Of a stretch of DNA of 64,000 bases, positions 22,433-55,312 are shown one piece after another. Numbering within the stretch: position 1 is the stretch's first letter; every line of letters starts with the position of its first letter. The position numbers and the translations under genes are program-made. The notes beneath the pieces are model-generated. The model did not search any database, was not told the origin of the DNA, and saw nothing but the letters and a program-made list of their open reading frames with translations. The stretch lies in the IMG/VR virus record IMGVR_UViG_3300033153_013547, positions 1-64,000 of that record; one strand, given 5' to 3'.

Positions 22433-24094
22433 CTAATAATCAAGATCAACTACTATATCATCCTTCTCTGACTCTAACATTTTCTTTACATGTCGATCAA
22501 TAAGATCTTCACTAAATTTTTCTTTTTCTTCCAGAACATTATACACATGATGTTCTATGCTTTCCTGACCATCTTGGAGAACTGTTTTCAACATATAATA
22601 ACTAACTCTGTTGAGCTGTCCTGGTCTATGAAATCTTGCCAAAAATTGGGACCAACTTCCCATTCTAAAATTAGCACCATAGATCACAACAGTATTACAA
22701 CAAACAAGATTGATACTCTCACCAGCATCTATTTGCATTACCAGAAACTGATTGCCATTAGGATCTTGAAAATCAGATATAACATTTGTTGCTTCTTGTG
22801 CTGTAAGACCACCATATAATTTGTTGCAGTTTAGTTTATCAGCCAATTCTTCCACTGTTTTTCTAAAGTGAGCTGCCACAACAACTTTGTTGCCAGATTC
22901 TTTAGCAGAATCCACAATATCCAGCAGAAATTCTAACTTGGCAGAATCCTCTATGCTTTGTCCAGCAGCAATACCATCACATATTTGCATAAGATCCATA
23001 TTATTTGATGGTTTGTGTTCAGCAGCAAGCACAGCACACTTAGTTACATAAAGATCATTAAGCCTTTTGCTTGCCATACAATCAATAGGAATAAATAATT
23101 GTTCAGGTAAATCCAAGCACTGATCTTTTGTAAATCTGATACCATAATCAAATAATATAGATCTTAGCTCTGGTATGTTTTTGAACCCTACCAGAACTTT
23201 ATGCCTATGAGGTCTATACCTTTGGACCATAACACAATATTTTTGGGTAAATTGCCAATAACTTTTACCTAATATATTTTTGTCAAGAAATGACAACTGA
23301 CCATACAGATCCATATACTTACTTACAACAGGAGTGCCTGTCATAAGCATTTTATATGGAGCCTTTAGTCTTCTGATAGTTTCAGCATAACTTAGCTTCT
23401 TACCTTTGGTTCTAATTTTGTAATTCTTGATATGATGAGCTTCATCTATTATAATCATATCAAAAGTGTCAAATGCACCAAAACCTATACCATCAGCAGG
23501 AACATAACCTGCTGATTCATAGTTAGTAATATAAAACAATGCATCTTTTTTGAAGGCTGCTTGTTTTTGCTGTGGAGAACCAGATGCTATAGAATAACTA
23601 TGAAACCTTTCAGGCAACCACTTCTCAATTTCTTTTACCCAGGTCTCAATCATTGCTTTTTTGGGTGAGAAGATCAATACTTTATGGACAGCACCTTGCT
23701 CTACCCTATATTTTACAATTTCAAGAACAACCCTTGTTTTTGCAGTGCCTTGTTCAGCAAAAATAGCACTCTTGCTTTTTAGCAAGCAAAACTGATACAT
23801 AATATTCTGATGATCAAAAGCAGGAGGATCACCTTCAATCACTGGCTTATTGTGATCTAAGTGATATGTGATTTCAAAAAGATCTTCATCAAGGTAATTT
23901 GCTAATTTTTCTTTTGCCCATTCACATTTAGCAATAGGAAGATACCAATATTTACCAACAGGCTCATATCTGGCTTTTATGGACTTCATAACTGAAATAT
24001 ACTCATCAGCCCAGGGAAAATACATGACACATCTATCTTCATCTGGAACAATTGTAAGTCCAAACCTGTCCTTAGGCAGGGGAATGCTAATCAT
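22433..24094 (-). CDS. SNF2-family helicase with an N-terminal HARP-like domain
   Basis: AEQGTAKT, NYE, IIIDEAH.IKN, MTGTP, ESINL, QFLARFHRPGQ. Confidence 0.9.
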   Translation of the reverse strand: MISIPLPKDRFGLTIVPDEDRCVMYFPWADEYISVMKSIKARYEPVGKYWYLPIAKCEWAKEKLANYLDEDLFEITYHLDHNKPVIEGDPPAFDHQNIMYQFCLLKSKSAIFAEQGTAKTRVVLEIVKYRVEQGAVHKVLIFSPKKAMIETWVKEIEKWLPERFHSYSIASGSPQQKQAAFKKDALFYITNYESAGYVPADGIGFGAFDTFDMIIIDEAHHIKNYKIRTKGKKLSYAETIRRLKAPYKMLMTGTPVVSKYMDLYGQLSFLDKNILGKSYWQFTQKYCVMVQRYRPHRHKVLVGFKNIPELRSILFDYGIRFTKDQCLDLPEQLFIPIDCMASKRLNDLYVTKCAVLAAEHKPSNNMDLMQICDGIAAGQSIEDSAKLEFLLDIVDSAKESGNKVVVAAHFRKTVEELADKLNCNKLYGGLTAQEATNVISDFQDPNGNQFLVMQIDAGESINLVCCNTVVIYGANFRMGSWSQFLARFHRPGQLNRVSYYMLKTVLQDGQESIEHHVYNVLEEKEKFSEDLIDRHVKKMLESEKDDIVVDLDY

Positions 24095-25763
24095 TGATCT
24101 GATTCCTTGCTATAGCAGCCTCTTTATACTTAGGAGGCAATATTTTTGCATATTCTGATAGTGCTTCTAATCCTGTTACATATTTAGACATATACATCAA
24201 GACATCTGGCACATCATATAACGTTGATAGAATCATTATATCTGCTAATCCTAATCTTACACCACTCATCTCTCTAAGATCAGGAGACATAACTCTAGCA
24301 GGACCTGTGGCTGACAAACTATCAACAGCATGATTGTTTTGCCTAGTCATGAACACAAGACCATTGATACAATCAATTTCTTGCCCTTTATGAAATACCT
24401 TAGGACAATCTATTTCAGCAATCTTGCTTATACTATACTCACCAGTAAATTGCCTCACAAATAACCTTTTACCTGGGGCAATTCTATGAGATAGGACAGC
24501 TTCTATGAGCTGTCCATAATTTCTTCTGCCCTTATCTGGACCCTTGTAGATGGAAAATGGGTTGATGATCATGTCAATTCTCCTGCCCAGATCATCCACA
24601 GGCATCCAGTCATCAGGCATGATCTTCACAGTGCCTTTTTGACCACTTCTGTTAGACAATTTATCTCCATCTTCTAACTTGTAAGCAATAAATAGTTCAA
24701 TAGAAACAACCTTATGAATAGAATTCATATATGGTTTTTCTATTTCACTCACTTTATCAACAAATGCAAATGTATTAGCATCATAAAAATGTGCTTTGCA
24801 TTCGTTTTCACTATATGCACCTGCATAGGTGCATAATTGCTGACCATGTTCTACTATTTCTCCAGGTTTTACTAAGGAACTTGTGTTATGCCACATAAGA
24901 GACTTTCTCTTGAAACAACAAAATTTACCAGCAACTGATCTTGATACAACAATAGTGTCTTCAAATGTTTCTGCTATTGAAAAGAATGCTACTCTAACAT
25001 TCAGTCCAGGTGGATCAGGTATATGTCCTGTATCTGCTGTGGTAATTAAGGGTAACTCACTATGAACCAAATCAGTAGCATGTAACATGTTAGAAACAAT
25101 TATTGGTATTCTTCCTAAATTTGTATGTTCTATAAAGGGAATTTTCCTACTAACCTTAGAAAGCCTTCTACTATTAGATGGATCATTATTGTTATCCACC
25201 AAGAAATTAACTAGTCCTATCTTGTCTCCCATACTTGTAGCCAGAGTGTCTAAAATCTTTATAGATTGTATCCCTACTCTAAAATCATAATCTTGTGAAG
25301 GAGCAAGATTCTTTTCAGAATGAACCAAGACTCTATCCTTCATAACTGCTCTGTACAAAGCATTACCATAACCAAGAGGCTCAGTATTGATAGACATGTC
25401 TAGCATTGATTGAAACATGGATGGCCTTATGTCATATCCAAATTTGAGCCTATTCATGTTAAAATCTCCTACAGCTCTTGCCAATCTCATTTCTGCATAT
25501 TGTACTGGATCTACTAATATTCCTCCTATAAAATGAAACATAGGAATTCTAGACACACCATTATGTACTATATGTCCATCATCATACAATCTTGGTATGA
25601 TCAAAGTAACATTTAGTTCTGCATAATTAAATGATGCTAACGCTTTATCTTCTTCTTCCAGAATCTTGATATCAGATGAGCCAACAAAAATTTTGGGCAG
25701 AGAATATGGATTTACCAGGTATCTATGTTTTATACTCATATGCCCCTCCCCTGGTTTTGCCAT
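24087..25763 (-). CDS. RNA polymerase beta-like subunit (highly reduced)
   Basis: IPRLYDDGHIVHNG, IPFIEH, FEDTIVVS, GDKLSNRSGQKGTV, MP...GRRIDMIINP, GVRLG. Confidence 0.9.
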   Translation of the reverse strand: MAKPGEGHMSIKHRYLVNPYSLPKIFVGSSDIKILEEEDKALASFNYAELNVTLIIPRLYDDGHIVHNGVSRIPMFHFIGGILVDPVQYAEMRLARAVGDFNMNRLKFGYDIRPSMFQSMLDMSINTEPLGYGNALYRAVMKDRVLVHSEKNLAPSQDYDFRVGIQSIKILDTLATSMGDKIGLVNFLVDNNNDPSNSRRLSKVSRKIPFIEHTNLGRIPIIVSNMLHATDLVHSELPLITTADTGHIPDPPGLNVRVAFFSIAETFEDTIVVSRSVAGKFCCFKRKSLMWHNTSSLVKPGEIVEHGQQLCTYAGAYSENECKAHFYDANTFAFVDKVSEIEKPYMNSIHKVVSIELFIAYKLEDGDKLSNRSGQKGTVKIMPDDWMPVDDLGRRIDMIINPFSIYKGPDKGRRNYGQLIEAVLSHRIAPGKRLFVRQFTGEYSISKIAEIDCPKVFHKGQEIDCINGLVFMTRQNNHAVDSLSATGPARVMSPDLREMSGVRLGLADIMILSTLYDVPDVLMYMSKYVTGLEALSEYAKILPPKYKEAAIARNQIND

Positions 25764-27390
25764 TTTCTGCCAAAAATTCTTCTGTTAGGCATCTGCAGAA
25801 AACATTTTTTCCATTGATTGATACAGGCCATGCATTATAATCACATCCTACACATAGATCAGGCATCCATGCTTTTCCAAAGCATGGTGGGACATCTTCA
25901 GACAATTCAGGGAAAAATGCAAACTCAGGATCAATTACTCTGGCAAATTCAAGTGTTTCTGGACAACATCCTGAGTTATTGATCATAACGAGTGTGAAAA
26001 AGAGACCAAGTGCTGATGCAGGATTAGTTGAAGCATACAAATCATAGATTTCCTCAGGATTTCCTCCTGCCATGCAGAAAGGACGTATAGTTCCCACACC
26101 ATCCTTTACATCTTTCTGTCTAGCTGTTAATATTAAATCACAGAATGTACTAACTTCTTTTCTTGTAAGACTATCAGAAAATGCTTGCATTAGCAAATTT
26201 ATTGTCTCATCTTTGGTGTCTGCACACAATTTACGTACAGCAGAACAAATATTGAATATGTTTATTAATCTGCCATGCTTGCTGTGTAAATTAGTCTGTG
26301 AAATAGTTTCACAGACTTTTGCAACTTGACTTGCTCTTGTATCATTTATTTCAAGCAAATTCATGGTGTCTAGCCACAATTGTCCTGCTGATCCCATACC
26401 TATCTTCAATTGTATATTGGCAGACTGAACTGATGTTCTTTCTGCATAGAATTTTTCAATATTCAAAACCCCATCTTTATACAAAGAATCCTGTATATCT
26501 GATAGTTTTAGTGATCTACCATGAAAACTATCTGCCATTTCTATAAACTGATCCTTCATAGACTTATCTACGGGAGGATTTACCTCAGAAAACTCATTGA
26601 TATACAATACATGGGTATCCAAATAGTTTTCGTATAGCAATTCTTCTTTTGTACGTTTATGAAGGTTCTGTGGTAGACGAATTATACATAATCCATCACC
26701 ATCAAAATCACAAGCCAAGCCATTATTAATTGCAGGATGGATCTTAATACATCTTCCTTCCACTGGAATCATCCTGCAACCTATGATGCTGTCCCTATGC
26801 AAGACTGGATTCCTCAATAGGAGACCTATATCCCCCTCTTTAGCATCAATCTTTTTCATCAGTCCTATAGGAACACCAACTTCAGATTTCTCAGGATCAA
26901 GATCTAATGAAGTGGCAGCTATAGCTCTTCCACTAAATGGCATTCTTAGCCCCATAATATATCTGGCAAATATACCAGATTTTCCTACAATTGCTTCTGT
27001 TAATTTCTTTTGTAATCTAGTAACTGCTCTTTGCATAGAGTCACTGGTAAAATTCTTGTAAACAATAAGTTTTACAATCCCATCATAAGCTGCTGTCACA
27101 CCATTTATTATGTAATACAATCCTGTAATATCCACTGTACTTGGTCTAAGGTGTATAGGTATGACATATATTCTATCTACCACTGATCCAAAAAATCTGC
27201 AGAATATTTGATGATCATCACTATCCTTAGGCAACATAATATAACGACCCTTAGTAAATAAATCCGGGTCCATTACTGTACCAGTCGGATCGTACTCATG
27301 AAATGGAACAATAGATGAATAACCGCCAACTAATTCACGCATTATTACCTTCTTTACCAAAAATAACATGAAGATATTCACATGGCACAA
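25723..27390 (-). CDS. RNA polymerase beta'-like subunit (highly reduced); start probably ATG 27342
   Basis: VIPIHLRP, GKSGIFA..IMGLRMPFSGRAI, LLRNPVLHR.SI, catalytic ACDFDGD, trigger-loop-like ETISQTNLHSKHG. Confidence 0.92.
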   Translation of the reverse strand: MCHVNIFMLFLVKKVIMRELVGGYSSIVPFHEYDPTGTVMDPDLFTKGRYIMLPKDSDDHQIFCRFFGSVVDRIYVIPIHLRPSTVDITGLYYIINGVTAAYDGIVKLIVYKNFTSDSMQRAVTRLQKKLTEAIVGKSGIFARYIMGLRMPFSGRAIAATSLDLDPEKSEVGVPIGLMKKIDAKEGDIGLLLRNPVLHRDSIIGCRMIPVEGRCIKIHPAINNGLACDFDGDGLCIIRLPQNLHKRTKEELLYENYLDTHVLYINEFSEVNPPVDKSMKDQFIEMADSFHGRSLKLSDIQDSLYKDGVLNIEKFYAERTSVQSANIQLKIGMGSAGQLWLDTMNLLEINDTRASQVAKVCETISQTNLHSKHGRLINIFNICSAVRKLCADTKDETINLLMQAFSDSLTRKEVSTFCDLILTARQKDVKDGVGTIRPFCMAGGNPEEIYDLYASTNPASALGLFFTLVMINNSGCCPETLEFARVIDPEFAFFPELSEDVPPCFGKAWMPDLCVGCDYNAWPVSINGKNVFCRCLTEEFLAENGKTRGGAYEYKT

Positions 27391-30910: not shown

Positions 30911-31285
30911 TCAATTTTCGTGCGAATTCAAAACTTGGCAGGCATGTCGCCCAAAGTCCTTTATAATGTTTACTATTTCTCTAGCTTCACTCAAGCAATA
31001 AGAAGTAAGGCTATCTAAGGGTAGGTGTCCTCCATAGAATTTGCCTCTTGTTGCAATATCTTTCCAATAACCTGAATAAGACAGGCATTGGAAAATAATT
31101 TGCACCAAGGTCTCAGGTCCATCATAATCTTGATAGGTAACAACAACAATCAGTGCCATCCTTTCAGCAGCAAAAATTGTAGACTGATATTCATTGTCAC
31201 CTGTTTTTTCCCACTCCAATTGATTAGACTTCTTCACCATAAAAGACTTTCCTTCTGTCTTTCTCTTCTTGAAACTCAAGAACAA
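30911..31285 (-). CDS. hypothetical protein, paralog of 30572..30901
   Basis: As above; start probably ~31240. Confidence 0.65.
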   Translation of the reverse strand: MFLSFKKRKTEGKSFMVKKSNQLEWEKTGDNEYQSTIFAAERMALIVVVTYQDYDGPETLVQIIFQCLSYSGYWKDIATRGKFYGGHLPLDSLTSYCLSEAREIVNIIKDFGRHACQVLNSHEN

Positions 31286-32372
31286 TATCTATAAGATCAT
31301 TGGTCTCAATTAGACCTATGACATGTTTAATTTTACATGCTCTTATCCATTCATAAGCAGATGATATTTGTTCCTTACGCAAACAAAACAAAGCACCAGA
31401 ATAGGGGTAATTCATTGCCTCAAAAGCAAATTCCTTATCTTCTTTTATCATTTCAATAGAATGATAAGTTTCTTCTATATCTGCTACTAAATCTGCTATT
31501 CTTTGTCTTACAAGATCAAAGGCTACTGCCAATCCAGGAAAAAACAAGGCAAGATCATCACTATTTCCCTTGATCACTAAATCTATGATATCTTTTAAGG
31601 ACAAATTGTTCTTAATCCTTGTACCTCTTATGTAGCTTAGTGTTTTGAATTTCAGCCTGTTGAAGTTTTTATCTACAGCAACAAATCCTTCTGCCTGAGT
31701 TCCCATGATATTTTCACAGGCTGTTATTACACCTTCAGTAGTTCTAATATTCTTGTGTAATTTGACACATTCCCAACCAAATGTATTGGCAGCAGTATCA
31801 GGTAATTGTTCTAAATAAGGGTAGCCATGAGACATTTTTCTCACCCCATGAAGAACTATACGTGATCCTTTGTGCCTTACAAGCACTATATTAGCTGGAG
31901 TCATCAATTCAAACATGTAAGTAAATCCAGGCACAGGTAGTTTGTAACCAAGAGTTTTCCATGTTTCCCAGAACAATTCTTCAAAAGTTATTTCCCAACC
32001 TAAAACTCTTCCTCGTGCATCAGCCATACCTAAAGTGCTAACATTCCATTGATCATTGTAATACCACAAGCAAACCATTGATCCATCTACTTTTTCATAG
32101 ATGGAAACATTATTCCAGTCTAGTGCAACAGCATTAGGTTCCCCATAATTGAAGAATTTTCTGTAAGGAAAACAAACAGGCAACCAATCATTGTCTGCAT
32201 CTAACACTATACCTCTGGCATCTTGAACTACAGGATTTTCCATTGGGGAGTGAAGCGTATGATATTTAAACAAATACAGATTAGGAAATATAGAGTGTAT
32301 ATTATGCATTATTCCTAACTCATCAAGTTTATCTAAACCATGATGTCTAATAAAATTGACTATTTCTATCAT
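31224..32372 (-). CDS. T4 Rnl1-like RNA ligase
   Basis: ARGIVLD, PYRKFFNYGE, EKVDGS, TYMFEL, EGFV, RLKFK. Confidence 0.92.
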   Translation of the reverse strand: MIEIVNFIRHHGLDKLDELGIMHNIHSIFPNLYLFKYHTLHSPMENPVVQDARGIVLDADNDWLPVCFPYRKFFNYGEPNAVALDWNNVSIYEKVDGSMVCLWYYNDQWNVSTLGMADARGRVLGWEITFEELFWETWKTLGYKLPVPGFTYMFELMTPANIVLVRHKGSRIVLHGVRKMSHGYPYLEQLPDTAANTFGWECVKLHKNIRTTEGVITACENIMGTQAEGFVAVDKNFNRLKFKTLSYIRGTRIKNNLSLKDIIDLVIKGNSDDLALFFPGLAVAFDLVRQRIADLVADIEETYHSIEMIKEDKEFAFEAMNYPYSGALFCLRKEQISSAYEWIRACKIKHVIGLIETNDLIDIVLEFQEEKDRRKVFYGEEV

Positions 32373-34766: not shown

Positions 34767-35411
34767 CTAATTTCCTACATCCAAATTTATACGTGTGAAA
34801 TCACAAACCTGTGAGGACACATTATACACCTTTGTGTTCTCATATGCCCTGTTTTGTCCTTTTTGTTCATGAACATGACCACATATGATCAGTTTATAGT
34901 CTTGAACATTCACCCCAGGAATGCCTATGGCAGTTTGCCAATTAACATAATCTACAGTATGTTTAGGTGGGCTATGAGAGAGCAAAATATCAGTAGGCAA
35001 TAATTTATTTGTCATAGACTTTATAGCAGCATCAGTATCCATAAATGCCCATTGATCAATCATAGCAGGAATATCTTCTGCTGATGACCACCAAAATCCC
35101 TGAATGCTTAAATTTCCAATATGAACTACTTCTAAATGTCCAAGCAAATATTTATTTACATATTCATATTTACTTGTAATTTCTTTATGCTTGAAAACAA
35201 GATCATGATTGCCAGGTATGAACAAAAGATGATCAACTTTCTTGGCAACATGCTTAAGAAAATCATTGAACAATGCTAAATCATTTTCTGTATGTAATTC
35301 ATAGTCACCTGCTAACAAAAGCAAATTACAGGCTGGTACAATAATAGGCAAGGGAAGCACCCCATGCCAATCTGATGAAGCAGCAATTGATATAGTCATA
35401 GATCTGTCCAT
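34767..35411 (-). CDS. calcineurin-like metallophosphoesterase
   Basis: SDWHG, LAGD, PGNHD, SHSPP, CGHVHE. Confidence 0.9.
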   Translation of the reverse strand: MDRSMTISIAASSDWHGVLPLPIIVPACNLLLLAGDYELHTENDLALFNDFLKHVAKKVDHLLFIPGNHDLVFKHKEITSKYEYVNKYLLGHLEVVHIGNLSIQGFWWSSAEDIPAMIDQWAFMDTDAAIKSMTNKLLPTDILLSHSPPKHTVDYVNWQTAIGIPGVNVQDYKLIICGHVHEQKGQNRAYENTKVYNVSSQVCDFTRINLDVGN

Positions 35412-36346: not shown

Positions 36347-36773
36347 TCCTCATTTTCTCACCTATTCTTTTGCCTATCTCAAGAGCTTCATCTGCCGTGG
36401 GAAATACTCTGCCGAAAATTGGATGGATAGCACCAAATAACTTCTGCATCTTTATTCTTGTATCATTATCATAATACCCAGCATAATAACCAATATTTAA
36501 CAATTCATTTTTCGTGGCTTCTTCTACGGAAATTGAATGTATTGTCACAGCATAATTGACCAAGAGATCAAAATACTTTTTTGCTTGTTCTTCTGTCTCA
36601 ACAAAAGAACAAGCAGGATCATATACCTGTCCTATAGTCAAAGTGGCTTTTTGTTCTGTTGCAAGTTCAACAAGTTGGCAAGCTTCACTAAAGTTTTTTG
36701 CTTTTTCAGATAATGTCATAGCAACTTCCTTATCATCCAAGTAAAAAATAGGTAAGCCTCTAGTCAGAATCAA
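36339..36773 (-). CDS. hypothetical phage protein (start probably ~36719)
   Basis: NIGYYAGYY...HPIFG. Confidence 0.65.
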   Translation of the reverse strand: MILTRGLPIFYLDDKEVAMTLSEKAKNFSEACQLVELATEQKATLTIGQVYDPACSFVETEEQAKKYFDLLVNYAVTIHSISVEEATKNELLNIGYYAGYYDNDTRIKMQKLFGAIHPIFGRVFPTADEALEIGKRIGEKMRND

Positions 36774-37016
36774 ACTGACGACGGTAGTTTACAAGACTAC
36801 TGCTTTATCAACTAAGCTATAGAGGCATAAAAGCAAAGTTATTATATTCCTATTGGCAAAAAGACATGATCAACTTCTATTTCGGACACCTCATGTCCGA
36901 ATTATTCAATTCATCTTTTATAGTCCAAGTTGCTTTCTTAGCAAGTTCTGCAGTTCTCTTATACCTTAGCAGCCAGCATGGCTTTATATTTACAAGACAT
37001 AAGATCATGTACAAGA

Positions 37017-38687: not shown

Positions 38688-39191
38688 TTAGGCATCAAAC
38701 TTTTTCTTTTTCCATACATTTTTTACGTGACGATCATACATAATAGTTGATCCTGCTATTGCTACATTCATACAATATTGGGTATTTATTCTTAACACAT
38801 AATGACACCGATCTAAAACAGAAGGTGGTAATGTCTGATCTTCACCACCTAATATGTATATTGCTCGTTGAGGATGTTGAAATGTTTCAAGGGGCAAAGC
38901 TTGGTCAACTATTTCTACAGCAATAAAGGGACAATTGTATGGACAAAGACTCCAGAATGAATCATCACTTGGTTGCAACAAAGGAATATGTCTGTACATT
39001 TTGCAAGTATCAGTAGGTTGTTGCGTATAACGCCCACCGATCAATGCTATAAATGCGGCATCAAAGTTATATGCAGCTCGCATTAGCATTCCAACATTAG
39101 TAGTAATTTTGCCATGCCAAATAGCAATACCAAGCCAGCCTCTATCATTATAAACATTTCTATTTAACTTACGCACTTTACGACTAGACAT
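38688..39191 (-). CDS. SpoU/TrmH-family SPOUT RNA methyltransferase
   Basis: NVGMLMRAA..F, YILGGED..L, CMNVAIAG...MYD. Confidence 0.9.
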   Translation of the reverse strand: MSSRKVRKLNRNVYNDRGWLGIAIWHGKITTNVGMLMRAAYNFDAAFIALIGGRYTQQPTDTCKMYRHIPLLQPSDDSFWSLCPYNCPFIAVEIVDQALPLETFQHPQRAIYILGGEDQTLPPSVLDRCHYVLRINTQYCMNVAIAGSTIMYDRHVKNVWKKKKFDA

Positions 39192-40749: not shown

Positions 40750-42576
40750 TCACAGAACAATATTATATTTATCCTCAAATTCATCATATGTCATGATTGG
40801 AATTCCTGTTTCCATTGCTATAGCCATTTTAGATGATGTAGAATTTTTATCAGCACATATCAATATTTCAACTGGTTTTTTCCAAGTGTCAGAAACTATA
40901 AAGCCACGACTGACTAAAATATCCCTATATTCATATCTATACAGAGTGGGATGTTTGCCAGTACAGCAGACAACAATTGGAGATGCTTCAGTGCTAAGTA
41001 TTTCTGCATCCAGATCAACAAAAAGATCAAGACAATCCCTGACTTTGTCAATACCTTCAGAGATCAGGGCTTTGTGAGTATCATCAAACCCTTTGATATC
41101 ATCAAGACCATTTGCCTGCACTTCTGATATGAAATTCTCAATATTACCATAGTGTTCTATGAGTTTCTTGCCCTGTTTTCTGTCAATATTTGGCAAATCA
41201 GCACATTCAATAATTGCTTCTTCACTAAGTTCCAGATTTCTTAATTGTCTGTGCAGGTATTCTGCTGCCTCATCACTAAAACCATCAATTGCTGATAACT
41301 CATCAACAGAGAGATCATAAATGTCTCTTAGATTTTGATATCCAGCATTGAACAGCATTTCAACTGTTGCATCTGATATGTTATCTATTTCAAGGACAGA
41401 AAAAAGATGTTGAAGCTTAGAGAGCCTTTCTTTTGCACAATCTGTATTATTGCAACAAGCATGATATTTTCTCAATACGCTTGTGGTATTGCACAACGAA
41501 CAAACAGGTAGTTTTAGTCCCGTAGTAGATGATTCGTAAATATCCGAAATATATGGTGGAGAATCATAGACATGGGACTTAGCAACACCTACACGCGCAC
41601 CTATACCAAGCTTCAAGTTCTTAAGAATAGAGTAATTACTTACATTAACACGTTGTATATTAATACCATTAATAATTACTGGATTCTCAAGAACCAGAAC
41701 TGGGGCTAAATGTCCCTGGAACCCCATATTCCATTCAATTGATCCAATAATAGCTTCAGCAGAGTCATCAAACTTGACAGCTACAGTATTACCTGTAGTA
41801 ACTGCTTCTAATACCAACCCATTTGTACGATATGATTTAAGAGAATGATGAACAAATCGTCGTCTTAAATATTCATACAAAGACAAAGGGGTATTTATAT
41901 TATCTGATGCTGGAATATATTGCTCTGCAGGCCCAAGATAGAAATAAGAAAGAATTTGTTTCTTTGTTTCATAACTATCAATACATTCTCCTAAAACATC
42001 AAAGCTAACAATATTGATACTGTTATTCAACTTGGCTAATGAGGAAGGTTCAGCACTTAACAATTTAGAAGTAATACTCTGTGATTTTTCCAGTAATTCC
42101 CAAATAAAAGTAACAACTTCTGCCCTAACAACAATAAGATCATAAGGAAGATTTACATTAGTGTATATGTTCAAATATCTAGCCTTGTCTGTTATATCAT
42201 AACCAACAAGTCCATTGCCTCTTGTAGAAATAGATCTAAGATTCCCTTTATAATAAACAATTTCTAATGAAATACCATCAAGTTTTGGAGAATAAACTAT
42301 AGGACTATTCTGTACTCTTATCCACTCAGCCAGTTCTATTGGATCTTTTATTTTTCTTAGTCCCTTTATAGGAAAAACATGAGTCACTTTCTTTCTAAAC
42401 TTACTGACATCAACATCAAGACTTGCATCTGGATCCATATCTGTTAGCAGATCATATTCAGCATCTGTCAAAATAGGCTTATTTCCATTGTAATAAGCCT
42501 CATTAGCGTTTTTGACCAATGCTTTTTTGTCTGATTTTGTCATGAAACAACCCCTTAAAAACATTTTCCATACCAA
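40750..42576 (-). CDS. ligA: NAD+-dependent DNA ligase-like protein (atypical motifs); start probably ~42543
   Basis: AYYN..P.LTDAEYD (Ia), PKLDG, STRGNG..G.DIT, AVKF, OB fold, C4 zinc finger, HhH, BRCT. Confidence 0.88.
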   Translation of the reverse strand: MVWKMFLRGCFMTKSDKKALVKNANEAYYNGNKPILTDAEYDLLTDMDPDASLDVDVSKFRKKVTHVFPIKGLRKIKDPIELAEWIRVQNSPIVYSPKLDGISLEIVYYKGNLRSISTRGNGLVGYDITDKARYLNIYTNVNLPYDLIVVRAEVVTFIWELLEKSQSITSKLLSAEPSSLAKLNNSINIVSFDVLGECIDSYETKKQILSYFYLGPAEQYIPASDNINTPLSLYEYLRRRFVHHSLKSYRTNGLVLEAVTTGNTVAVKFDDSAEAIIGSIEWNMGFQGHLAPVLVLENPVIINGINIQRVNVSNYSILKNLKLGIGARVGVAKSHVYDSPPYISDIYESSTTGLKLPVCSLCNTTSVLRKYHACCNNTDCAKERLSKLQHLFSVLEIDNISDATVEMLFNAGYQNLRDIYDLSVDELSAIDGFSDEAAEYLHRQLRNLELSEEAIIECADLPNIDRKQGKKLIEHYGNIENFISEVQANGLDDIKGFDDTHKALISEGIDKVRDCLDLFVDLDAEILSTEASPIVVCCTGKHPTLYRYEYRDILVSRGFIVSDTWKKPVEILICADKNSTSSKMAIAMETGIPIMTYDEFEDKYNIVL

Positions 42577-46123: not shown

Positions 46124-48070
46124 TTACTCCCTAGAAAGTAGTAGCTTGACAAAAGTGTCTCTTTCTATGTTCTCAAGTGATAGATCTATATCTGCATCAT
46201 CTGGGCTATCCAGCAAAATTGCACCTGCCTTGACAAACAAATCATTAAATGTTATAGCATTCATGCGAGAATACATCAAATACTGCCTGACATGTTCAAT
46301 TATTGCAGTATGGCGCATAGAAATTCCATTACCAACATGTATTCCACCAAGGTAAATGGCTAGATCATTGCTTCTAGTTGTCAGCAATCCAACCACCTGT
46401 TGTTTTTCTACAACTAGTGGAATGCTTGCTACTACTAAATTTGGATCCACTATGTGATCTAGCAAACATGCTTTGTTTTCTTCATTATTATTTCCAGCAG
46501 TCATTGAATTACTTCTAGCAATAATCAAGTTGAAGGGAACATTAGATATTCTTCTGGTATAATCATTGACATTTACTAGGTAGTCTTTCATAACTCCCAA
46601 ACTTATTCTAATTACTTCTGTTGCACCATCAGGTGGTGGTGCATCTATCACATCTCCTGAAAATAGAATGTCTGAACCTGAGCTTCTGTAATCACCATCC
46701 CATCCTATTTTCTGACCCAATGATGTTATAGATAGATCAAGATCTATTCTTGTATCTGATGAATTCTTCCAATGAATACCAATCAGCATATCCATTGGCA
46801 CAGCAATAGAAGTGCCAAATGGAAATCCATGTAAAAATTGTTTCTCAGATGCTGGAACACCATAACAAACAAAATCAGGTATGTAAATTTTCTTGTTTGC
46901 AACAGCAGGTGCAATACTGGAAGCTATTTCATTTACTACCATATCTAAAACGGATTGTGCTTTTTGCCGTTGTTCGTAACTAAACGGCTTGATCTCTGTA
47001 GCAAATCCTTTTCCATTACGAATACGATATAATATTGAATAACTATTTGACATTCTATATTGCAGTGCATGCATCAATCGTATTTGACGGAAGACATTTA
47101 CTCTCTTCAACTCTGCACGTATCTTATCTTCCTGTAAATCAATGCCCATTGTAATATACTTAGTTATAGAATTGAGATAATCTTCTTGCATAGGCTTGTG
47201 ATGTTTCTTAGCCATTCTCCTGATGTAATTGACCATAGAACGACAATCATCATGAAGTTTTCTTATTGCCAGAAAGATTGGCTTAAATCTATAGAAAATT
47301 TCTCCCAGCCTATGCAAACCATAGGTTTCATCATATTTTTTCAAAAGCCTAGCAATAGACTTTCCTTTTTGTGAGCAACGAATCTCTGTGATCATATCTT
47401 TGCTCTTAATAAGCAAGGTTTTACCTGTAAGTTTATACACAAGAAGTCTAAGAAATTCCACTGGATCATGAGGCAACAACCCAATTTTATCACAGAAAAT
47501 AGCCATAGCCTCTTTATTTCTTATAGACTCTATATCTTCTGAGGTTACATTCACCACATCAGCTATAGTGATTATGTCTTCTAATGTGTTTTCCTTAAGT
47601 GCAATACCTGAAGAAAGAAGAGTAAGAATTTTAGACTTGAGTTCATCAATAGTATATCCATGAATAATTGTTATGCTCAATTTATCAGTTATTTCAGGAA
47701 TATCTAGTGCTTCACTTGGAATGTATATGCAATCTGAGTTGTATGCTTCAGAATGTTCTGATTCATATACAGAAATATAATGAAGGATTTGTTCAACCAC
47801 AAGTCGTTCAGCAGAAGCAGTAACCACTTTGTTCCATGATTTATGAAAAGTGGAGTTTAGTTGCTGTGGAGATACTGCAAGTTCAGTAGCTATGCTTGTT
47901 ATGATTTCTTCTATAGCAGAATCTGTATAATGATCTATAACCTCAGAGGACAAAATAAATCCAAGAGGGATTGTTTTAGACAGAAATTTATCTGAACATT
48001 TACGTTTAGGTTTGTCACCTATAGGTAATCCATGAAATAGGCGCAATGTAGCATTTATTATAGCAATCAT
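46124..48070 (-). CDS. 648-aa protein: long helical N-terminal region plus C-terminal TerD-like domain
   Basis: GGAGG RBS at 48076-48080; GIHW...RIDLDLS, IGWDG.YR, FSGDVIDAP...GATE are TerD-like. The ORF-track start at 48202 lies inside the RNA repeats. Confidence 0.75.
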   Translation of the reverse strand: MIAIINATLRLFHGLPIGDKPKRKCSDKFLSKTIPLGFILSSEVIDHYTDSAIEEIITSIATELAVSPQQLNSTFHKSWNKVVTASAERLVVEQILHYISVYESEHSEAYNSDCIYIPSEALDIPEITDKLSITIIHGYTIDELKSKILTLLSSGIALKENTLEDIITIADVVNVTSEDIESIRNKEAMAIFCDKIGLLPHDPVEFLRLLVYKLTGKTLLIKSKDMITEIRCSQKGKSIARLLKKYDETYGLHRLGEIFYRFKPIFLAIRKLHDDCRSMVNYIRRMAKKHHKPMQEDYLNSITKYITMGIDLQEDKIRAELKRVNVFRQIRLMHALQYRMSNSYSILYRIRNGKGFATEIKPFSYEQRQKAQSVLDMVVNEIASSIAPAVANKKIYIPDFVCYGVPASEKQFLHGFPFGTSIAVPMDMLIGIHWKNSSDTRIDLDLSITSLGQKIGWDGDYRSSGSDILFSGDVIDAPPPDGATEVIRISLGVMKDYLVNVNDYTRRISNVPFNLIIARSNSMTAGNNNEENKACLLDHIVDPNLVVASIPLVVEKQQVVGLLTTRSNDLAIYLGGIHVGNGISMRHTAIIEHVRQYLMYSRMNAITFNDLFVKAGAILLDSPDDADIDLSLENIERDTFVKLLLSRE

Positions 48071-48090
48071 TTGTACCTCCATACAAGAAT

Positions 48091-48308
48091 GTTCTGGTGG
48101 CGAGAAGTAAGACTTAATACTACGATTAAATAGGAACTTCTTATGCCACCAGAACTGGTTGCATAAGTAAAAATACCTAGCGGCGGAGAGTAAGTTATCC
48201 ATTTTATAGGAACTATCTATGCCGCTAGGATCAATACATGATAGCGAGAAGTAAAGCTAAGCGCCATGTTGCCATGGCAGTATAAATAGGAACTTCTTAT
48301 GCTATCAT
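48091..48308 (-). ncRNA. three tandem structured RNA-like elements (48091-48155, 48176-48229, 48238-48308)
   Basis: Each has a different perfect closing stem, a conserved GC-AUA-(AGAAGU/GAUAGU)-UCCUAU ... UUACU(U)CUC(C)-GC core and a variable interior. Confidence 0.75.
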
Positions 48309-49113: not shown

Positions 49114-49139
49114 TGTTACTATCCTTTAGAAAACAAAAA

Positions 49140-49221
49140 TGCCCGAGGTAGGATTCAAACCTACACGCCCGAAAGCCTAGCATTTTAAGTGCTATATGTC
49201 TATCTATTCCATCACTCGGGC
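49140..49221 (-). tRNA. tRNA-Leu(TAA), with non-canonical D and T loops, no encoded CCA
   Basis: GCCCGAG acceptor stem, TAGCA-CTTAAAA-TGCTA anticodon arm, long variable arm, GTAGG-TTTGAAT-CCTAC T arm, discriminator A. Confidence 0.88.
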
Positions 49222-49258
49222 ATGTTATTATGTCTTTACTAACAGAAGAATATCTCTT

Positions 49259-53641: not shown

Positions 53642-55312
53642 TCACTTCTTCCTCCAACCAACAGCAGATTTCAACCTATACATCATAGTCTCAGGTTCTG
53701 TTGAATCCAAACCAGTAGCATAATCTAACAGATCTGACTCATCTTTGCCAAGATTTTTGTCAAGATGTTTAGAAATAATTCTAGGCTTCATAACTGATTT
53801 CTCAGTTTCCTCTTCAAATCCTATTTCTATAATTTTACCTATGTAATGATCAGGATGTAAATAAGCATCTCTTCTTACTTCATCTGTCAATCCAGTTCCT
53901 GCTTTGAATTGTTTTGTGCCATTTTGATTCTGAACAATAAACCCACCAATCATTTTACCTTTTAGTTTGTTTTGTCCAGGGAAGGTGTCTATAATTTCAC
54001 AATCTTCTGTGCTGAGAGCTTTCCATTTGACCATCTGAGAATTGAAATCACCTGTGGTATCCTTTCCCACTACTCCTTCACCATTAGCACTAACCACTTT
54101 TTCAAATAAGGTTTTGCCATCATCTGAGGAAATAGGGACACTAACAAAATTTGACTTCTGAGATCTAACCCAGTTCTCATATATTGCCCTTCTGTCAATA
54201 TATGGCAACTTATCTACTTTTTTACCATCAAATTGATAGACATCAAATATAACAAGTTTAGCCTTACCAGGCAGAATAGCCTGATTTTCTCTACTTTTGA
54301 CAGGCAAAGCATTAGACAATCCTGCAATTATTTGTTCTCTTTCTTGTCCTGATTCAACATAAACCAACTCTGCCTTGAAAATAGTCTTACCATCAGGAAA
54401 TTTCAGTGTTTGCAACTCAGGATAATAATTATAAGTTCTATCAATTGTTTTACCATCCACTGAAATTCTATGGCTGGTAAGGGTAACAGATTTACCTTTA
54501 CTGCCAGAGATATTTACATGTGCTCCCTTGTGTTTTTGTTCCCAAATAATCTTTGGATCACTAAGAGCAGCTGTTACCAAATGTTTTGCAGAAGAATAGA
54601 TTCCTTTGTCTAATCTAACAGCCTTGGAATCTTTCAAGTCACTTTTTGTATAAAGCCATTTACCATTTTTGTTAGTAAGTGTAACCTTTTCATTAGACTC
54701 AGTAATAAACTGAATCTGATCTTCATTACATTTAGTGACTAGAATTTTACCATCATAGACATTTCTAACTTTGCCTTTGCCATAACCTTCTGGTATCTCA
54801 AACCATTTCTTGCTTATTTGATCAGACCAGTTGATTGTATGATCATTAGTCCTAATCATTTGTAATTTCTTGTCAGGTAAAACACCCTTCCTGGTTACAA
54901 ATGACATAGCAAACTTATTACCATACCTATTGACCAAGTGAATTCTATAATCATAGTGCAATCCTGCTTTGTCTGCTACATGTTCTTGAATAACAAGTCT
55001 GGTAAGTTTGCCTTCGTTAGTTTTGCTAGGAACATCAAGTAAGACAGAAGGAAAAATTCTCTTTACAAGGAAATTTGATTTCTCAACACCATATGAATTC
55101 TTGTGTTGAGAAATAGTTTGTTTGATCAATGGATTCACAAGATGATTGAGAAAAGAAATGATGTCTCTTTTGAATTCACAAACAAGATCAGTTAGAGCAT
55201 TAGCAAGACAATTCAAAGCCAAACTCCTTGTAAGATTATTATCTTCTGTCATAATCTCTAGATTGTTATGCATATTGCCAGTGACAACAAGTCTAATATT
55301 TTCATAAATCAA
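53642..55312 (-). CDS. LigD-type 3'-phosphoesterase fused to an ATP-dependent DNA ligase
   Basis: PE domain: VIQEH.A...LHYDYR, TNDH, IPEGYGKG.V..YD.G. Ligase: EQKHKG, AEL, IFDV, EGVVGK, VKWK, OB fold GTGLTD..R. Confidence 0.85.
   Translation of the reverse strand: MIYENIRLVVTGNMHNNLEIMTEDNNLTRSLALNCLANALTDLVCEFKRDIISFLNHLVNPLIKQTISQHKNSYGVEKSNFLVKRIFPSVLLDVPSKTNEGKLTRLVIQEHVADKAGLHYDYRIHLVNRYGNKFAMSFVTRKGVLPDKKLQMIRTNDHTINWSDQISKKWFEIPEGYGKGKVRNVYDGKILVTKCNEDQIQFITESNEKVTLTNKNGKWLYTKSDLKDSKAVRLDKGIYSSAKHLVTAALSDPKIIWEQKHKGAHVNISGSKGKSVTLTSHRISVDGKTIDRTYNYYPELQTLKFPDGKTIFKAELVYVESGQEREQIIAGLSNALPVKSRENQAILPGKAKLVIFDVYQFDGKKVDKLPYIDRRAIYENWVRSQKSNFVSVPISSDDGKTLFEKVVSANGEGVVGKDTTGDFNSQMVKWKALSTEDCEIIDTFPGQNKLKGKMIGGFIVQNQNGTKQFKAGTGLTDEVRRDAYLHPDHYIGKIIEIGFEEETEKSVMKPRIISKHLDKNLGKDESDLLDYATGLDSTEPETMMYRLKSAVGWRKK

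What the first reader, a model, noticed from the sequence alone, without database searches (positions are those of the whole stretch)
46124..48308. Array of three covarying structured RNAs directly upstream of a large helical + TerD-like protein: candidate new ribonucleoprotein system
Seen in the sequence, read as the minus-strand transcript. Copy A (48308-48238): AUGAUAGC-AUA-AGAAGU-UCCUAU-[UUAUACU GCCAUG GCAA CAUGGC GCUUAGCU]-UU-ACUUCU-C-GCUAUCAU. Copy B (48229-48176): CCUAGCGGC-AUA-GAUAGU-UCCUAU-[AAAAUGGAUAAC]-UU-ACUCUCC-GCCGCUAGG. Copy C (48155-48091): GUUCUGGUGGC-AUA-AGAAGU-UCCUAU-[UUAAU CGUAGU AUUAA GUC]-UU-ACUUCU-C-GCCACCAGAAC. The closing stems (8, 9 and 11 bp) differ in sequence but are all perfectly paired, which amounts to covariation within one genome. 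The AUA/C asymmetric loop, the adjacent helix, the unpaired UCCUAU and UUAC are conserved, while the apical segment varies in length and sequence. The array ends about 10 nt before the GGAGG RBS of a 648-aa gene with a TerD-like C-terminus. It is not CRISPR-like (conserved flanks enclose the variable part inside one hairpin) and not tRNA-like. Inference: these are protein-binding RNA modules, either processed small RNAs or a multi-site autoregulatory leader, for the downstream protein. The logic resembles Ro60/TROVE with Y RNAs (bulged-helix binding site plus variable loop) or type III antitoxin arrays. The variable loops could act as adaptors or guides.
Basis: partly seen in the sequence, partly recalled or inferred. 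Interest (0 to 1): 0.9.

Follow-up and report, generated by a model that had tools for sequence, protein, structure and literature searches.

The report
Hairpin RNA array with partner protein
Three small structured RNAs sit in front of a large uncharacterised phage protein, and the same RNA-plus-protein pair recurs in about a hundred other phage and bacterial genomes, often beside tRNA genes and RNA-repair enzymes, so it is probably an undescribed RNA-protein machine.

Summary
Three about 55-70 nt hairpin modules lie at 48308-48091 (minus strand), ending 10 nt before the GGAGG of a 648-aa gene.

A covariance model built only from other contigs finds exactly these three and nothing else in 64 kb. 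None of 4227 Rfam families matches, and they are not tRNAs.

The pairing is general. Modules lie on the gene strand next to homologs of the protein in 75 of 79 viral loci and about 24 of 27 genome loci. That is 213 hits in the viral loci, none antisense. No protein-coding neighbour is conserved.

Stems covary: 11 of 12 pairs show compensatory changes and G-U is tolerated. C-A-N-A, GUUCCUA, UAC and C-G are invariant, and the apical loops evolve freely.

The protein has a helical-repeat N-domain with no significant structural match and a TerD-like beta-sandwich. It has no Pfam, PHROG or PADLOC hit, and the family holds at least 1,100 clusters at 50% identity.

The gene sits inside tRNA arrays in cultured cyanophages and next to RtcB (with RlaP in one species) in Chryseobacterium.

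The best reading is a new RNA-protein pair that works like Ro60/Y RNA but is not homologous to it, with a role in tRNA or RNA repair. Binding and function are inferred. The guide-RNA idea is not supported.

The parts
48238..48308 (-). Hairpin module A: P1 8 bp (AUGAUAGC/GCUAUCAU), AUA bulge, P2 AGAAGU/ACUUCU, loop starting UCCUAU, with an apical GCCAUG-GCAA-CAUGGC hairpin
   Evidence: Sequence; structural parse; fold; R1 51.9 bits; independent model R2 49.3 bits, E 5e-11
48176..48229 (-). Hairpin module B: P1 9 bp (CCUAGCGGC/GCCGCUAGG), AUA bulge, P2 GAUAGU/ACUCUC with one U-C mismatch, short unstructured loop
   Evidence: R1 56.6 bits; R2 41.5 bits, E 7e-9
48091..48155 (-). Hairpin module C: P1 11 bp (GUUCUGGUGGC/GCCACCAGAAC), AUA bulge, P2 AGAAGU/ACUUCU, loop with a small UUAAU/AUUAA stem
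   Evidence: R1 57.6 bits; R2 52.4 bits, E 8e-12
48076..48080 (-). GGAGG ribosome-binding site, 10 nt after module C and 5 nt before the ATG at 48070
   Evidence: Read from the sequence
46886..48070 (-). N-terminal about 395 residues of the 648-aa protein: alpha-helical repeat domain with invariant polar residues N72, Q94, Y98, Y102, E187, R208, R261, N281, H291, R351 and N352. Candidate RNA-binding part (inferred)
   Evidence: AF2 full-length model, pLDDT 85.2; invariant columns across 18 sequences down to 25% identity; Foldseek against PDB gives only weak TPR/PPR/designed-repeat hits, best E 0.04; no Pfam, PHROG or PADLOC hit; NCBIfam gives only a sub-cutoff chance-level hit here (E 0.056)
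46316..46885 (-). Residues about 396-585: TerD-like beta-sandwich with conserved DxD (D443, D445), GW(D/N) (G456, W457), SGD (471-473) and GAxE (482-485)
   Evidence: Foldseek BFVD: TerD-like protein of Rhizobium phage RHph_Y65 (prob 1.0, TM 0.55) and full-length matches including 'putative tellurium resistant like protein'; PDB top hit 9a6r_B, E 6e-5; NCBIfam partial hit to the SCO0854 family at residues 415-495, E 3e-7; invariant columns
46124..46315 (-). C-terminal helical tail (residues 586-648) and stop codon
   Evidence: AF2 secondary structure; ORF end

Best explanation
The three hairpins are copies of an undescribed structured-RNA family, and the downstream 648-aa protein is their dedicated partner.

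Shown:
- The RNA fold is under selection.
- RNA and protein are inherited together, on one strand and adjacent, across phages and some bacteria.

Inferred:
- The array is transcribed with or just ahead of the gene.
- The invariant internal-loop core (C-A-N-A/C at the P1-P2 junction, and GUUCCUA...UAC at the top of P2) is the docking site for the helical-repeat domain.
- P1, the outer part of P2 and the apical loop only need to hold the shape.
- The resulting RNA-protein particle acts in tRNA or RNA repair or quality control. It occupies the genomic niche that Ro60/Y RNA occupies next to RtcB, without being homologous to it.
- The module nearest the start codon (median about 28 nt away) may also let the protein repress its own translation.
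For: RNA is real:
- On 132 distinct modules, 96.6% of cells pair, 11 of 12 pairs show compensatory changes, and 0 of 500 shuffles reach this. Slid registers pair only 36-52%.
- G-U is tolerated in interior pairs, while other mismatches are almost absent there. Two orthologous substitutions in P1 create wobble pairs. This points to RNA on this strand.
- An independent model re-finds the three window copies.

Linkage:
- R1 gives 213 hits, all on the gene strand, in 75 of 79 viral loci with the protein. Two of the other four loci have no upstream DNA.
- About 24 of 27 genome loci have hits at E below 0.01.
- A strict structural parse finds 169 modules on the gene strand and 0 antisense, usually 2-3 per locus.
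- Starting from the RNA side, 11 of 12 true tandem arrays carry the gene in the same locus.
- No protein-coding neighbour is conserved: the next most common family is in 7 of 79 loci.

Partner is phage-encoded rather than host: the RNA core is invariant from cyanophages to gut code-15 phages to Flavobacteriia, while the protein falls to 25-30% identity with about 35 invariant residues.

Trans-acting rather than only a leader: modules also lie downstream of the gene (L191, L143, L159, L135 and L144; S-CRM01 and Phass-1), or kilobases away inside tRNA arrays, starting 1 nt after a tRNA (L081 and S-CRM01).

RNA-repair theme:
- The gene is embedded in the tRNA arrays of S-CRM01 and S-CBWM1.
- tRNAs lie within 3 kb in 21 of 79 loci, all co-oriented.
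- The order is RtcB - modules - protein in three Chryseobacterium species; RlaP directly follows the protein in C. defluvii.
- Bona fide RtcB and QueC occur in viral L155.
- RNA ligase (3 loci) and CCA-adding enzyme (2 loci) are among the nearest neighbours.
Against: - No binding, processing or expression data exist. All function is guilt by association.
- RNA-repair neighbours are present in a minority of loci (roughly a dozen of 94), and tRNAs in about a quarter.
- The protein has no recognisable RNA-binding or catalytic domain, and TerD domains are not known RNA binders.
- The tight, co-oriented position just before the start codon fits a purely cis-regulatory leader equally well.
- One short contig (L312) has two strong modules followed by an unrelated small gene.
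- Covariation counts come from alignments fitted to the model, and my first set of instances was selected for pairing.
Confidence: 0.55

Rival explanations
1. Purely cis-acting autoregulatory leader. The modules are operator sites in the 5' UTR; the protein binds them and blocks its own ribosome-binding site. No free small RNA or separate particle exists.
For: The modules are always on the gene strand. The last one ends a median 28 nt before the start, and 10 nt before GGAGG in the window. Arrays of 2-3 sites would give cooperative repression. A promoter-like site lies directly before the first module in L312.
Against: Modules occur downstream of the gene (L191/L203, L143, L159, L135, L144, S-CRM01, Phass-1). 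They also occur far from it inside tRNA arrays, abutting tRNA 3' ends (L081, S-CBWM1). L312 has modules before an unrelated gene. Up to 7-8 copies is more than an operator needs.
Confidence: 0.2
2. Processing or neutralisation system of the type III toxin-antitoxin or Cas6 style. The protein is an endoribonuclease that cuts the array into units, and these units then bind and inhibit or load it.
For: The layout is the same: tandem RNA units directly upstream of, and co-oriented with, the protein gene. Short linkers (median 11 nt) would suit unit-wise cleavage.
Against: The units are not near-identical direct repeats. They differ in sequence and length (34-133 nt) and keep only structure. No ToxN/Abi-type or defence-system (PADLOC) model matches. 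No conserved nuclease motif was recognised: R284 of a possible Rx6H is not conserved. The cassette is carried by lytic phages inside tRNA arrays.
Confidence: 0.1
3. tRNA anticodon-arm mimics. Each module reads as a 5-bp stem plus U32-U33-C-C-U-A37, an insertion, then A38. The modules would act as decoys or competitive substrates for host anticodon nucleases or tRNA-modifying enzymes, or as substrates of RtcB, with the protein presenting or protecting them.
For: The consensus fits a canonical anticodon stem and loop with the insertion at the 37/38 position. The location in tRNA arrays and next to RtcB, RlaP, CCA-adding enzymes and RNA ligases fits. A tRNA in L004 carries the module core inside its anticodon arm.
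Against: The same loop sequence is invariant in phages of very different hosts and in bacterial chromosomes, which is unexpected for decoys tuned to host nucleases. P1 is 3-13 bp, not a 7-bp acceptor stem. There is no D or T arm, and ARAGORN and the Rfam tRNA model reject the modules. The reading is pattern-matching, not a test.
Confidence: 0.1
4. DNA-level element: REP/MITE-like palindromes, recombinase or homing-endonuclease sites that spread near this gene.
For: The units are palindromic, multi-copy and sometimes dispersed, and include an insertion-like copy of the core inside a tRNA gene. Homing endonucleases are frequent neighbours (NUMOD3 in 3 loci). From memory, GAAGTTCCTATT resembles an FRT half-site.
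Against: The strand bias is absolute (213 and 169 to 0). G-U wobble is tolerated where the other strand would have A-C. No recombinase or transposase is conserved nearby. Linkage to one protein family holds across 25-45% identity. Copies within an array are old and divergent, not recent transpositions.
Confidence: 0.03

Closest known systems
Ro60 (Rsr) with Y RNAs (YrlA/YrlB), as in the Salmonella rsr-yrlBA-rtcBA operon
   Same: A large protein built from helical repeats plus a C-terminal cation-binding domain is encoded next to one or more small structured RNAs. The conserved part of each RNA is a stem with an asymmetric bulge, and the rest is variable. It is found in bacteria and phages, adjacent to RtcB in some genomes, and linked to tRNA biology (Chen et al. 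2014, PMC4201824, read; the operon structure is from my own knowledge).
   Different: No TROVE or vWA domain (Foldseek to Rsr 2nvo E = 0.3). The C-terminal domain is TerD-like. The RNA lacks the GNCGAAN0-1G / GGUCCGA Ro-binding motif and any D/T-arm tRNA-like domain, and matches no Rfam family. Modules are shorter (about 57 nt against 80-130 nt) and come in tandem arrays of 2-8.
Type III toxin-antitoxin systems (ToxIN, CptIN, TenpIN)
   Same: Tandem RNA units lie directly upstream of, and co-oriented with, the protein that is expected to bind them.
   Different: ToxI-type units are near-identical direct repeats of about 34-36 nt that form pseudoknots, and the toxin is a small endoRNase (my knowledge). 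Here the units are divergent hairpins of 34-133 nt. The protein is about 630 aa with no matching toxin-family or defence-system model.
TerD family (tellurite-resistance / stress proteins, e.g. B. subtilis YceC/SCP2)
   Same: The C-terminal about 190 residues share the beta-sandwich fold and the acidic DxD / SGD / GAxE motifs typical of the calcium sites.
   Different: Classical TerD proteins are stand-alone, about 190 aa, and sit in ter operons with no RNA partner. Here the domain is fused to a 395-residue helical domain, Pfam's TerD model does not score, and no ter genes are nearby.
CsrB/RsmZ-type sponge RNAs
   Same: Multiple hairpins each present the same short motif, which would allow several copies of one protein to bind.
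   Different: Those RNAs present GGA motifs for CsrA/RsmA and are not encoded next to the protein gene (my knowledge). Here the motif is GUUCCUA in an internal loop, and linkage to the protein gene is nearly obligate.

Membership tests
Ro60 / Y RNA ribonucleoprotein | Protein has a TROVE (HEAT-repeat ring) domain | tested here: not met
   Pfam at E up to 1 finds no TROVE in any of 34 family members. Foldseek of the full model to D. radiodurans Rsr (2nvo) gives E 0.3, prob 0.15. The N-domain alone gives no Ro hit in the top 50.
Ro60 / Y RNA ribonucleoprotein | C-terminal vWA domain with a MIDAS site | tested here: not met
   The C-terminal domain matches TerD-like beta-sandwiches, not vWA.
Ro60 / Y RNA ribonucleoprotein | RNA carries the Ro-binding motif (GNCGAAN0-1G or GGUCCGA) or matches a described Rfam family (Rfam 15 should hold the Y RNA models) | tested here: not met
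   No Rfam family at E up to 10 on the region, and none at gathering score in four related loci. The module consensus has no such motif. The motif definition is from PMC4201824.
Ro60 / Y RNA ribonucleoprotein | Genomic association with RtcB-type RNA repair genes | tested here: met
   RtcB is directly upstream in three Chryseobacterium genomes, with RlaP directly downstream of the protein in C. defluvii, and RtcB occurs in viral L155. This holds in a minority of loci only.
Type III toxin-antitoxin | Near-identical tandem direct repeats of fixed length | tested here: not met
   Units differ in sequence and length. Mean column identity is 45% and only the core is invariant.
Type III toxin-antitoxin | Protein belongs to a ToxN/Abi-type endoRNase family or to a known defence system | tested here: not met
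   No PADLOC, Pfam or PHROG match.
TerD domain family | TerD beta-sandwich fold with conserved acidic calcium-binding motifs | tested here: met
   Foldseek prob 1.0 to phage TerD-like proteins (TM 0.55-0.57) and to PDB 9a6r_B. D443, D445, S471-G472-D473, G482-A483 and E485 are invariant. The sequence-level Pfam model does not score.
tRNA / tRNA-like | Cloverleaf with D and T arms, recognised by tRNA models | tested here: not met
   ARAGORN and Rfam RF00005 call only the true tRNAs at 36755-36826 and 49139-49222.
CRISPR array | Identical repeats separated by unique spacers, with spacers matching foreign DNA | tested here: not met
   Conserved segments enclose the variable part within one hairpin and the flanking stems differ between units. 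Variable loops have no match in the window beyond chance.

The most novel reading that the evidence does not exclude
This is a previously unrecognised, widespread ribonucleoprotein of large phages and some bacteria. It is non-homologous to Ro60/Y RNA but fills the same niche. A helical-repeat/TerD protein would be loaded with small hairpin RNAs made from tRNA-type arrays, and would work with RtcB, RlaP, RNA ligases and CCA-adding enzymes to protect or repair tRNAs during phage-host conflict. A bolder version is a protein-dependent RNA cutting-and-rejoining system acting at the anticodon-arm-like loop, as the interrupted tRNA in L004 hints.
Probability: 0.4. Interest if true: 0.9.

Novelty: categorically new. 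Interest (0 to 1): 0.82.

Why it matters
If the inference holds, a large protein family with no annotation acquires a defined RNA partner. The family has 1,718 clusters at 50% identity with E up to 0.001 and 1,142 at E up to 1e-30.

It also acquires a biological setting: tRNA arrays and RtcB operons. That would give a second, independently evolved example of the Ro60/Y-RNA logic and a new handle on why phages carry tRNA clusters and RNA-repair genes.

It would also add a new structured-RNA family for Rfam and for phage annotation. For example, it explains an intergenic stretch in the published S-CRM01 genome that is currently annotated with a probably spurious ORF.

The question is directly testable in culturable systems: cyanophage S-CRM01 with Synechococcus LC16, Chryseobacterium defluvii DSM 14219, and heterologous expression in E. 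coli.

Tried and rejected
- **Rfam.** Gathering score on the whole window and E up to 10 on the region gave only two tRNAs and a chance snoRNA hit.
- **Megablast of the locus against 50,697 phage records.** No match.
- **Pfam, PHROGs, NCBIfam and PADLOC on the protein.** Nothing except a partial NCBIfam hit to the SCO0854 RING family over the TerD-like part.
- **Sequence search of the PDB with the protein and with a profile.** Only an eL8/L7Ae hit at E about 1, which I treat as chance. It lies in the beta-sandwich, and the RNA is not a K-turn because it has no tandem G-A.
- **First collection scan with a loose 14-base pattern.** Mostly chance matches, which had to be filtered by structure.
- **Guide hypothesis.** Loops B and C have no targets in the window beyond chance, and loops are not conserved between orthologous arrays.
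- **Anti-Shine-Dalgarno pairing by UCCU.** Rejected because the motif is equally invariant in Bacteroidota and cyanophage loci, whose hosts make little use of SD sequences (my knowledge), and start regions differ.
- **HEPN-like Rx6H (R284...H291).** R284 is not conserved in distant members.
- **Terminator or sigma-70 promoter reading of the array.** Scans were at or below shuffle expectation.
- **FRT-like half-site.** A resemblance from memory only; no recombinase is nearby.
- **Burroughs and Aravind 2016 (NAR 44:8525).** The paper most likely to have mentioned this protein could not be read because it is not held.
- **Diverse alignment A5 for the representative search.** A1 was used instead.
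Full report
**1. What is in the window**

The window is part of a 261-kb viral contig, IMGVR_UViG_3300033153_013547. It has about 36% G+C and almost all long ORFs are on the minus strand. It carries jumbo-phage-type genes:
- split RNA polymerase beta-like genes, a ClpB-like ATPase, SbcC, and NAD- and ATP-type DNA ligases;
- an Rnl-type RNA ligase, a SpoU-type methylase and two tRNAs.

Their closing stems are 8, 9 and 11 perfect pairs of unrelated sequence. The only blemish is one U-C mismatch in the inner helix of copy B.

The stretch folds into the three hairpins with z = -6.8. Module C ends 10 nt before GGAGG (48080-48076), and the ATG at 48070 opens a 648-aa ORF ending at 46124. Homolog alignments support this start over the ATGs at 48202 and 48082.

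**2. Is it a known RNA?**

No. None of 4227 Rfam families matches, even at E up to 10. The same holds in four related loci, apart from their tRNAs. ARAGORN calls only tRNA-Thr and tRNA-Leu.

**3. The RNA family**

Homologs of the protein at 33-40% identity in other viral contigs have the same motif directly upstream.

I collected 21 modules from 9 contigs by a pattern scan plus a structural filter. I aligned them as A2 and built model R1.

In 79 further viral loci fetched through the protein, R1 found 213 hits. All were on the gene strand and almost all lay in the 700 nt before the gene.

On the 132 distinct sequences among the best 150 hits, the consensus has these parts:
- P1, mostly 4-7 bp and G-C rich at its inner end;
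- an invariant C, then A-N-A;
- P2 of 6 bp ending in G-U;
- a loop that opens with an invariant UCCUA followed by U-W-A-A, and closes with A-W-U-U;
- the A-C-U... strand of P2, a single C, then G and the other strand of P1.

The median module is 57 nt. Loops are about 12 to about 90 nt and only 37 of 132 fold stably.

Covariation is strong. 96.6% of cells pair, 11 of 12 pairs have compensatory changes (409 cells), no shuffle reaches this, and slid registers pair 36-52%. That alignment is fitted to the model, and my seed set was selected for pairing, so the counts lean towards the structure. The extension of P1 well beyond the 3-4 pairs I required was not imposed.

G-U pairs are tolerated where the opposite strand would have A-C. 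Two substitutions between orthologous arrays make wobble pairs. The structure therefore belongs to RNA of this strand.

Model R2, built only from those other contigs, re-finds exactly the three window modules and nothing else in 64 kb. This removes the circularity of R1.

**4. Linkage to the protein**

- Viral loci: 75 of 79 have modules. Two of the four exceptions have no upstream DNA, and the other two are one sequence with weak hits.
- Genome assemblies, including isolate Chryseobacterium and Mesonia genomes: about 24 of 27 loci have hits at E below 0.01, all upstream and co-oriented.
- A strict structural parse finds 169 modules on the gene strand and none antisense, usually 2-3 per locus. 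Linkers have a median of 11 nt, and the last module ends a median 28 nt before the gene.
- From the RNA side, a two-motif pattern scan gave 12 loci with true tandem arrays, and 11 of these encode the protein.
- The exception, L312, is a 4.3-kb contig in which two strong modules follow a promoter-like site and precede an unrelated small gene.
- No other protein family is shared by more than 7 of the 79 loci.

The conserved unit is therefore RNA array plus protein.

**5. Not only a leader**

Modules also occur:
- directly after the gene (L191/L203, L143, L159, L135, L144, and one copy in S-CRM01);
- 1.3-1.7 kb downstream of it (Phass-1);
- inside tRNA arrays kilobases away from it.

One contig has modules both next to the gene (L269) and within a 22-tRNA array (L081). 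In L081 the first module starts one nucleotide after tRNA-Lys. In S-CRM01 the array fills the gap between tRNA-Glu and the gene. This suggests tRNA-style processing into separate small RNAs, but that is an inference.

**6. The protein**

The family is large. It has 525 hits in the word-indexed search, none with a Pfam domain. The exhaustive profile search gives 1,718 50%-identity clusters at E up to 0.001 and 1,142 at E up to 1e-30, nearly all 600-690 aa.

AlphaFold2 gives a confident model, pLDDT 85 and pTM 0.83. It has three parts:
- about 395 residues of helical repeats;
- a beta-sandwich;
- a short helical tail.

Foldseek matches full-length uncharacterised proteins of Campylobacter phages, Lactobacillus phage LpeD and a 'putative tellurium resistant like protein'. 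It matches the beta-sandwich to TerD-like phage proteins. The PDB top hit is 9a6r_B, which to my knowledge is the B. subtilis TerD-family protein SCP2/YceC.

The acidic motifs DxD, SGD and GAxE are invariant. The helical domain alone has no significant structural neighbour; the best hits are designed, TPR and PPR repeats at E of 0.04 or more.

TROVE, vWA, HEPN and ToxN-like features were not found.

**7. Context**

Cultured phages with the gene are Synechococcus phages S-CRM01 and S-CBWM1 and the gut phage Phass-1. In the two cyanophages the gene lies in the middle of the tRNA arrays.

tRNAs or tmRNA lie within 3 kb in 21 of 79 viral loci, always co-oriented.

In three Chryseobacterium species the order is RtcB, modules, protein, in otherwise housekeeping surroundings. 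In C. defluvii RlaP directly follows the protein; in C. pennae an RlaP fragment lies about 2.8 kb further on, beyond unrelated genes. RlaP is an RNA 3'-end nucleotidyltransferase tied to RNA repair (bioRxiv 10.64898/2025.12.29.696909).

Viral L155 has a bona fide RtcB upstream and QueC downstream. Among 76 nearest neighbours there are three RNA ligases and two CCA-adding enzymes.

These associations are a minority of loci and I did not test them against a background. They all point to tRNA or RNA repair, the niche of Ro60/Y RNA (PMC4201824; PMC7824862).

**8. Mechanism**

Shown: a selected RNA fold, and obligate co-oriented linkage to one protein family.

Inferred: the invariant junction and loop nucleotides are the protein's docking site. 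The argument is that they stay fixed across hosts as different as cyanobacteria, Bacteroidota and gut bacteria while the protein co-varies, so the constant partner must be the co-encoded protein rather than a host factor.

Further inferences are that the variable loops are spacers or optional hairpins, because they drift with indels between orthologs. They also include that the particle acts with RNA-repair enzymes and that the proximal module may give autoregulation.

The module can also be read as an anticodon arm: a 5-bp stem, then U-U-CCU-A, an insertion, then A. A tRNA in L004 carries the module core inside a 47-nt insertion in its anticodon arm. I record this as a lead, not a finding.

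**9. Novelty and verdict**

Neither part belongs to a described family in Rfam 15, Pfam, PHROGs or PADLOC. NCBIfam gives only a partial hit over the TerD-like part. Full-text searches found no description. One relevant paper could not be read.

The system works like Ro60/Y RNA on present evidence but fails every homology-based membership test. I rate it as a new RNA-protein system: real with high confidence, function inferred with moderate confidence.

Noticed in passing
L004:4658-4776 (same in L005 about 467-585): A 119-nt match to the Rfam tRNA model (52.8 bits) has normal acceptor, D and T arms. It also has an insertion of about 47 nt in the anticodon arm containing UGUUCCUAUUAAA, the 5' core of the hairpin module. 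It lies between two modules upstream of the protein gene. ARAGORN does not call it.
   Followed up: partly
L204:3791-3937 (S-CRM01 record 132391-132537, ORF g173c): This annotated hypothetical ORF on the opposite strand lies on top of the module array that fills the gap between tRNA-Glu and g174. It is probably a spurious gene call.
   Followed up: partly
L312:3128-3300: Two strong modules (about 51 bits) follow directly after a TTGACA-17-TAATAT promoter-like site and precede an unrelated small ORF. No homolog of the 648-aa protein lies in this 4.3-kb contig. This is the only true array found without the gene.
   Followed up: partly
L081:8324-8463 and L269:12146-12262 (one contig, IMGVR_UViG_3300017963_000316): The same phage contig has modules at two places: next to the protein gene, and inside a 22-tRNA array. 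In the tRNA array the first module starts one nucleotide after tRNA-Lys.
   Followed up: yes
L173:2850-2925 (also L182, L189): An extra conserved hairpin (CTCCTAAACC ... GGTTTAGGAG) lies between two modules, and the first module sits inside a much longer outer stem. These features are not part of the common model.
   Followed up: no
window 48070-48202: There are three possible starts for the gene: ATG 48202 (692 aa, would overlap modules B and C), ATG 48082 (652 aa, apparently the database gene call P0001) and ATG 48070 (648 aa, with GGAGG upstream). Homolog alignments favour 48070.
   Followed up: yes
window 31227-32372, 34770-35411, 38691-39191, 36755-36826, 49139-49222: The wider region has an RNA-handling theme: an Rnl-type RNA ligase, a metallophosphoesterase, a SpoU-type RNA methylase, tRNA-Thr(UGU) and tRNA-Leu(UAA). 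tRNA-Leu lies about 830 nt upstream of the array.
   Followed up: partly
window 24090-27390, 16280-18607, 40753-42576, 53645-55312: Jumbo-phage hallmarks are present: two adjacent ORFs with weak RNA polymerase beta-subunit matches, a ClpB-like ATPase (phrog_4871), and both an NAD-dependent and an ATP-dependent DNA ligase in one 64-kb stretch.
   Followed up: no
No recombinase is nearby, and I treat it as coincidence.
   Followed up: no
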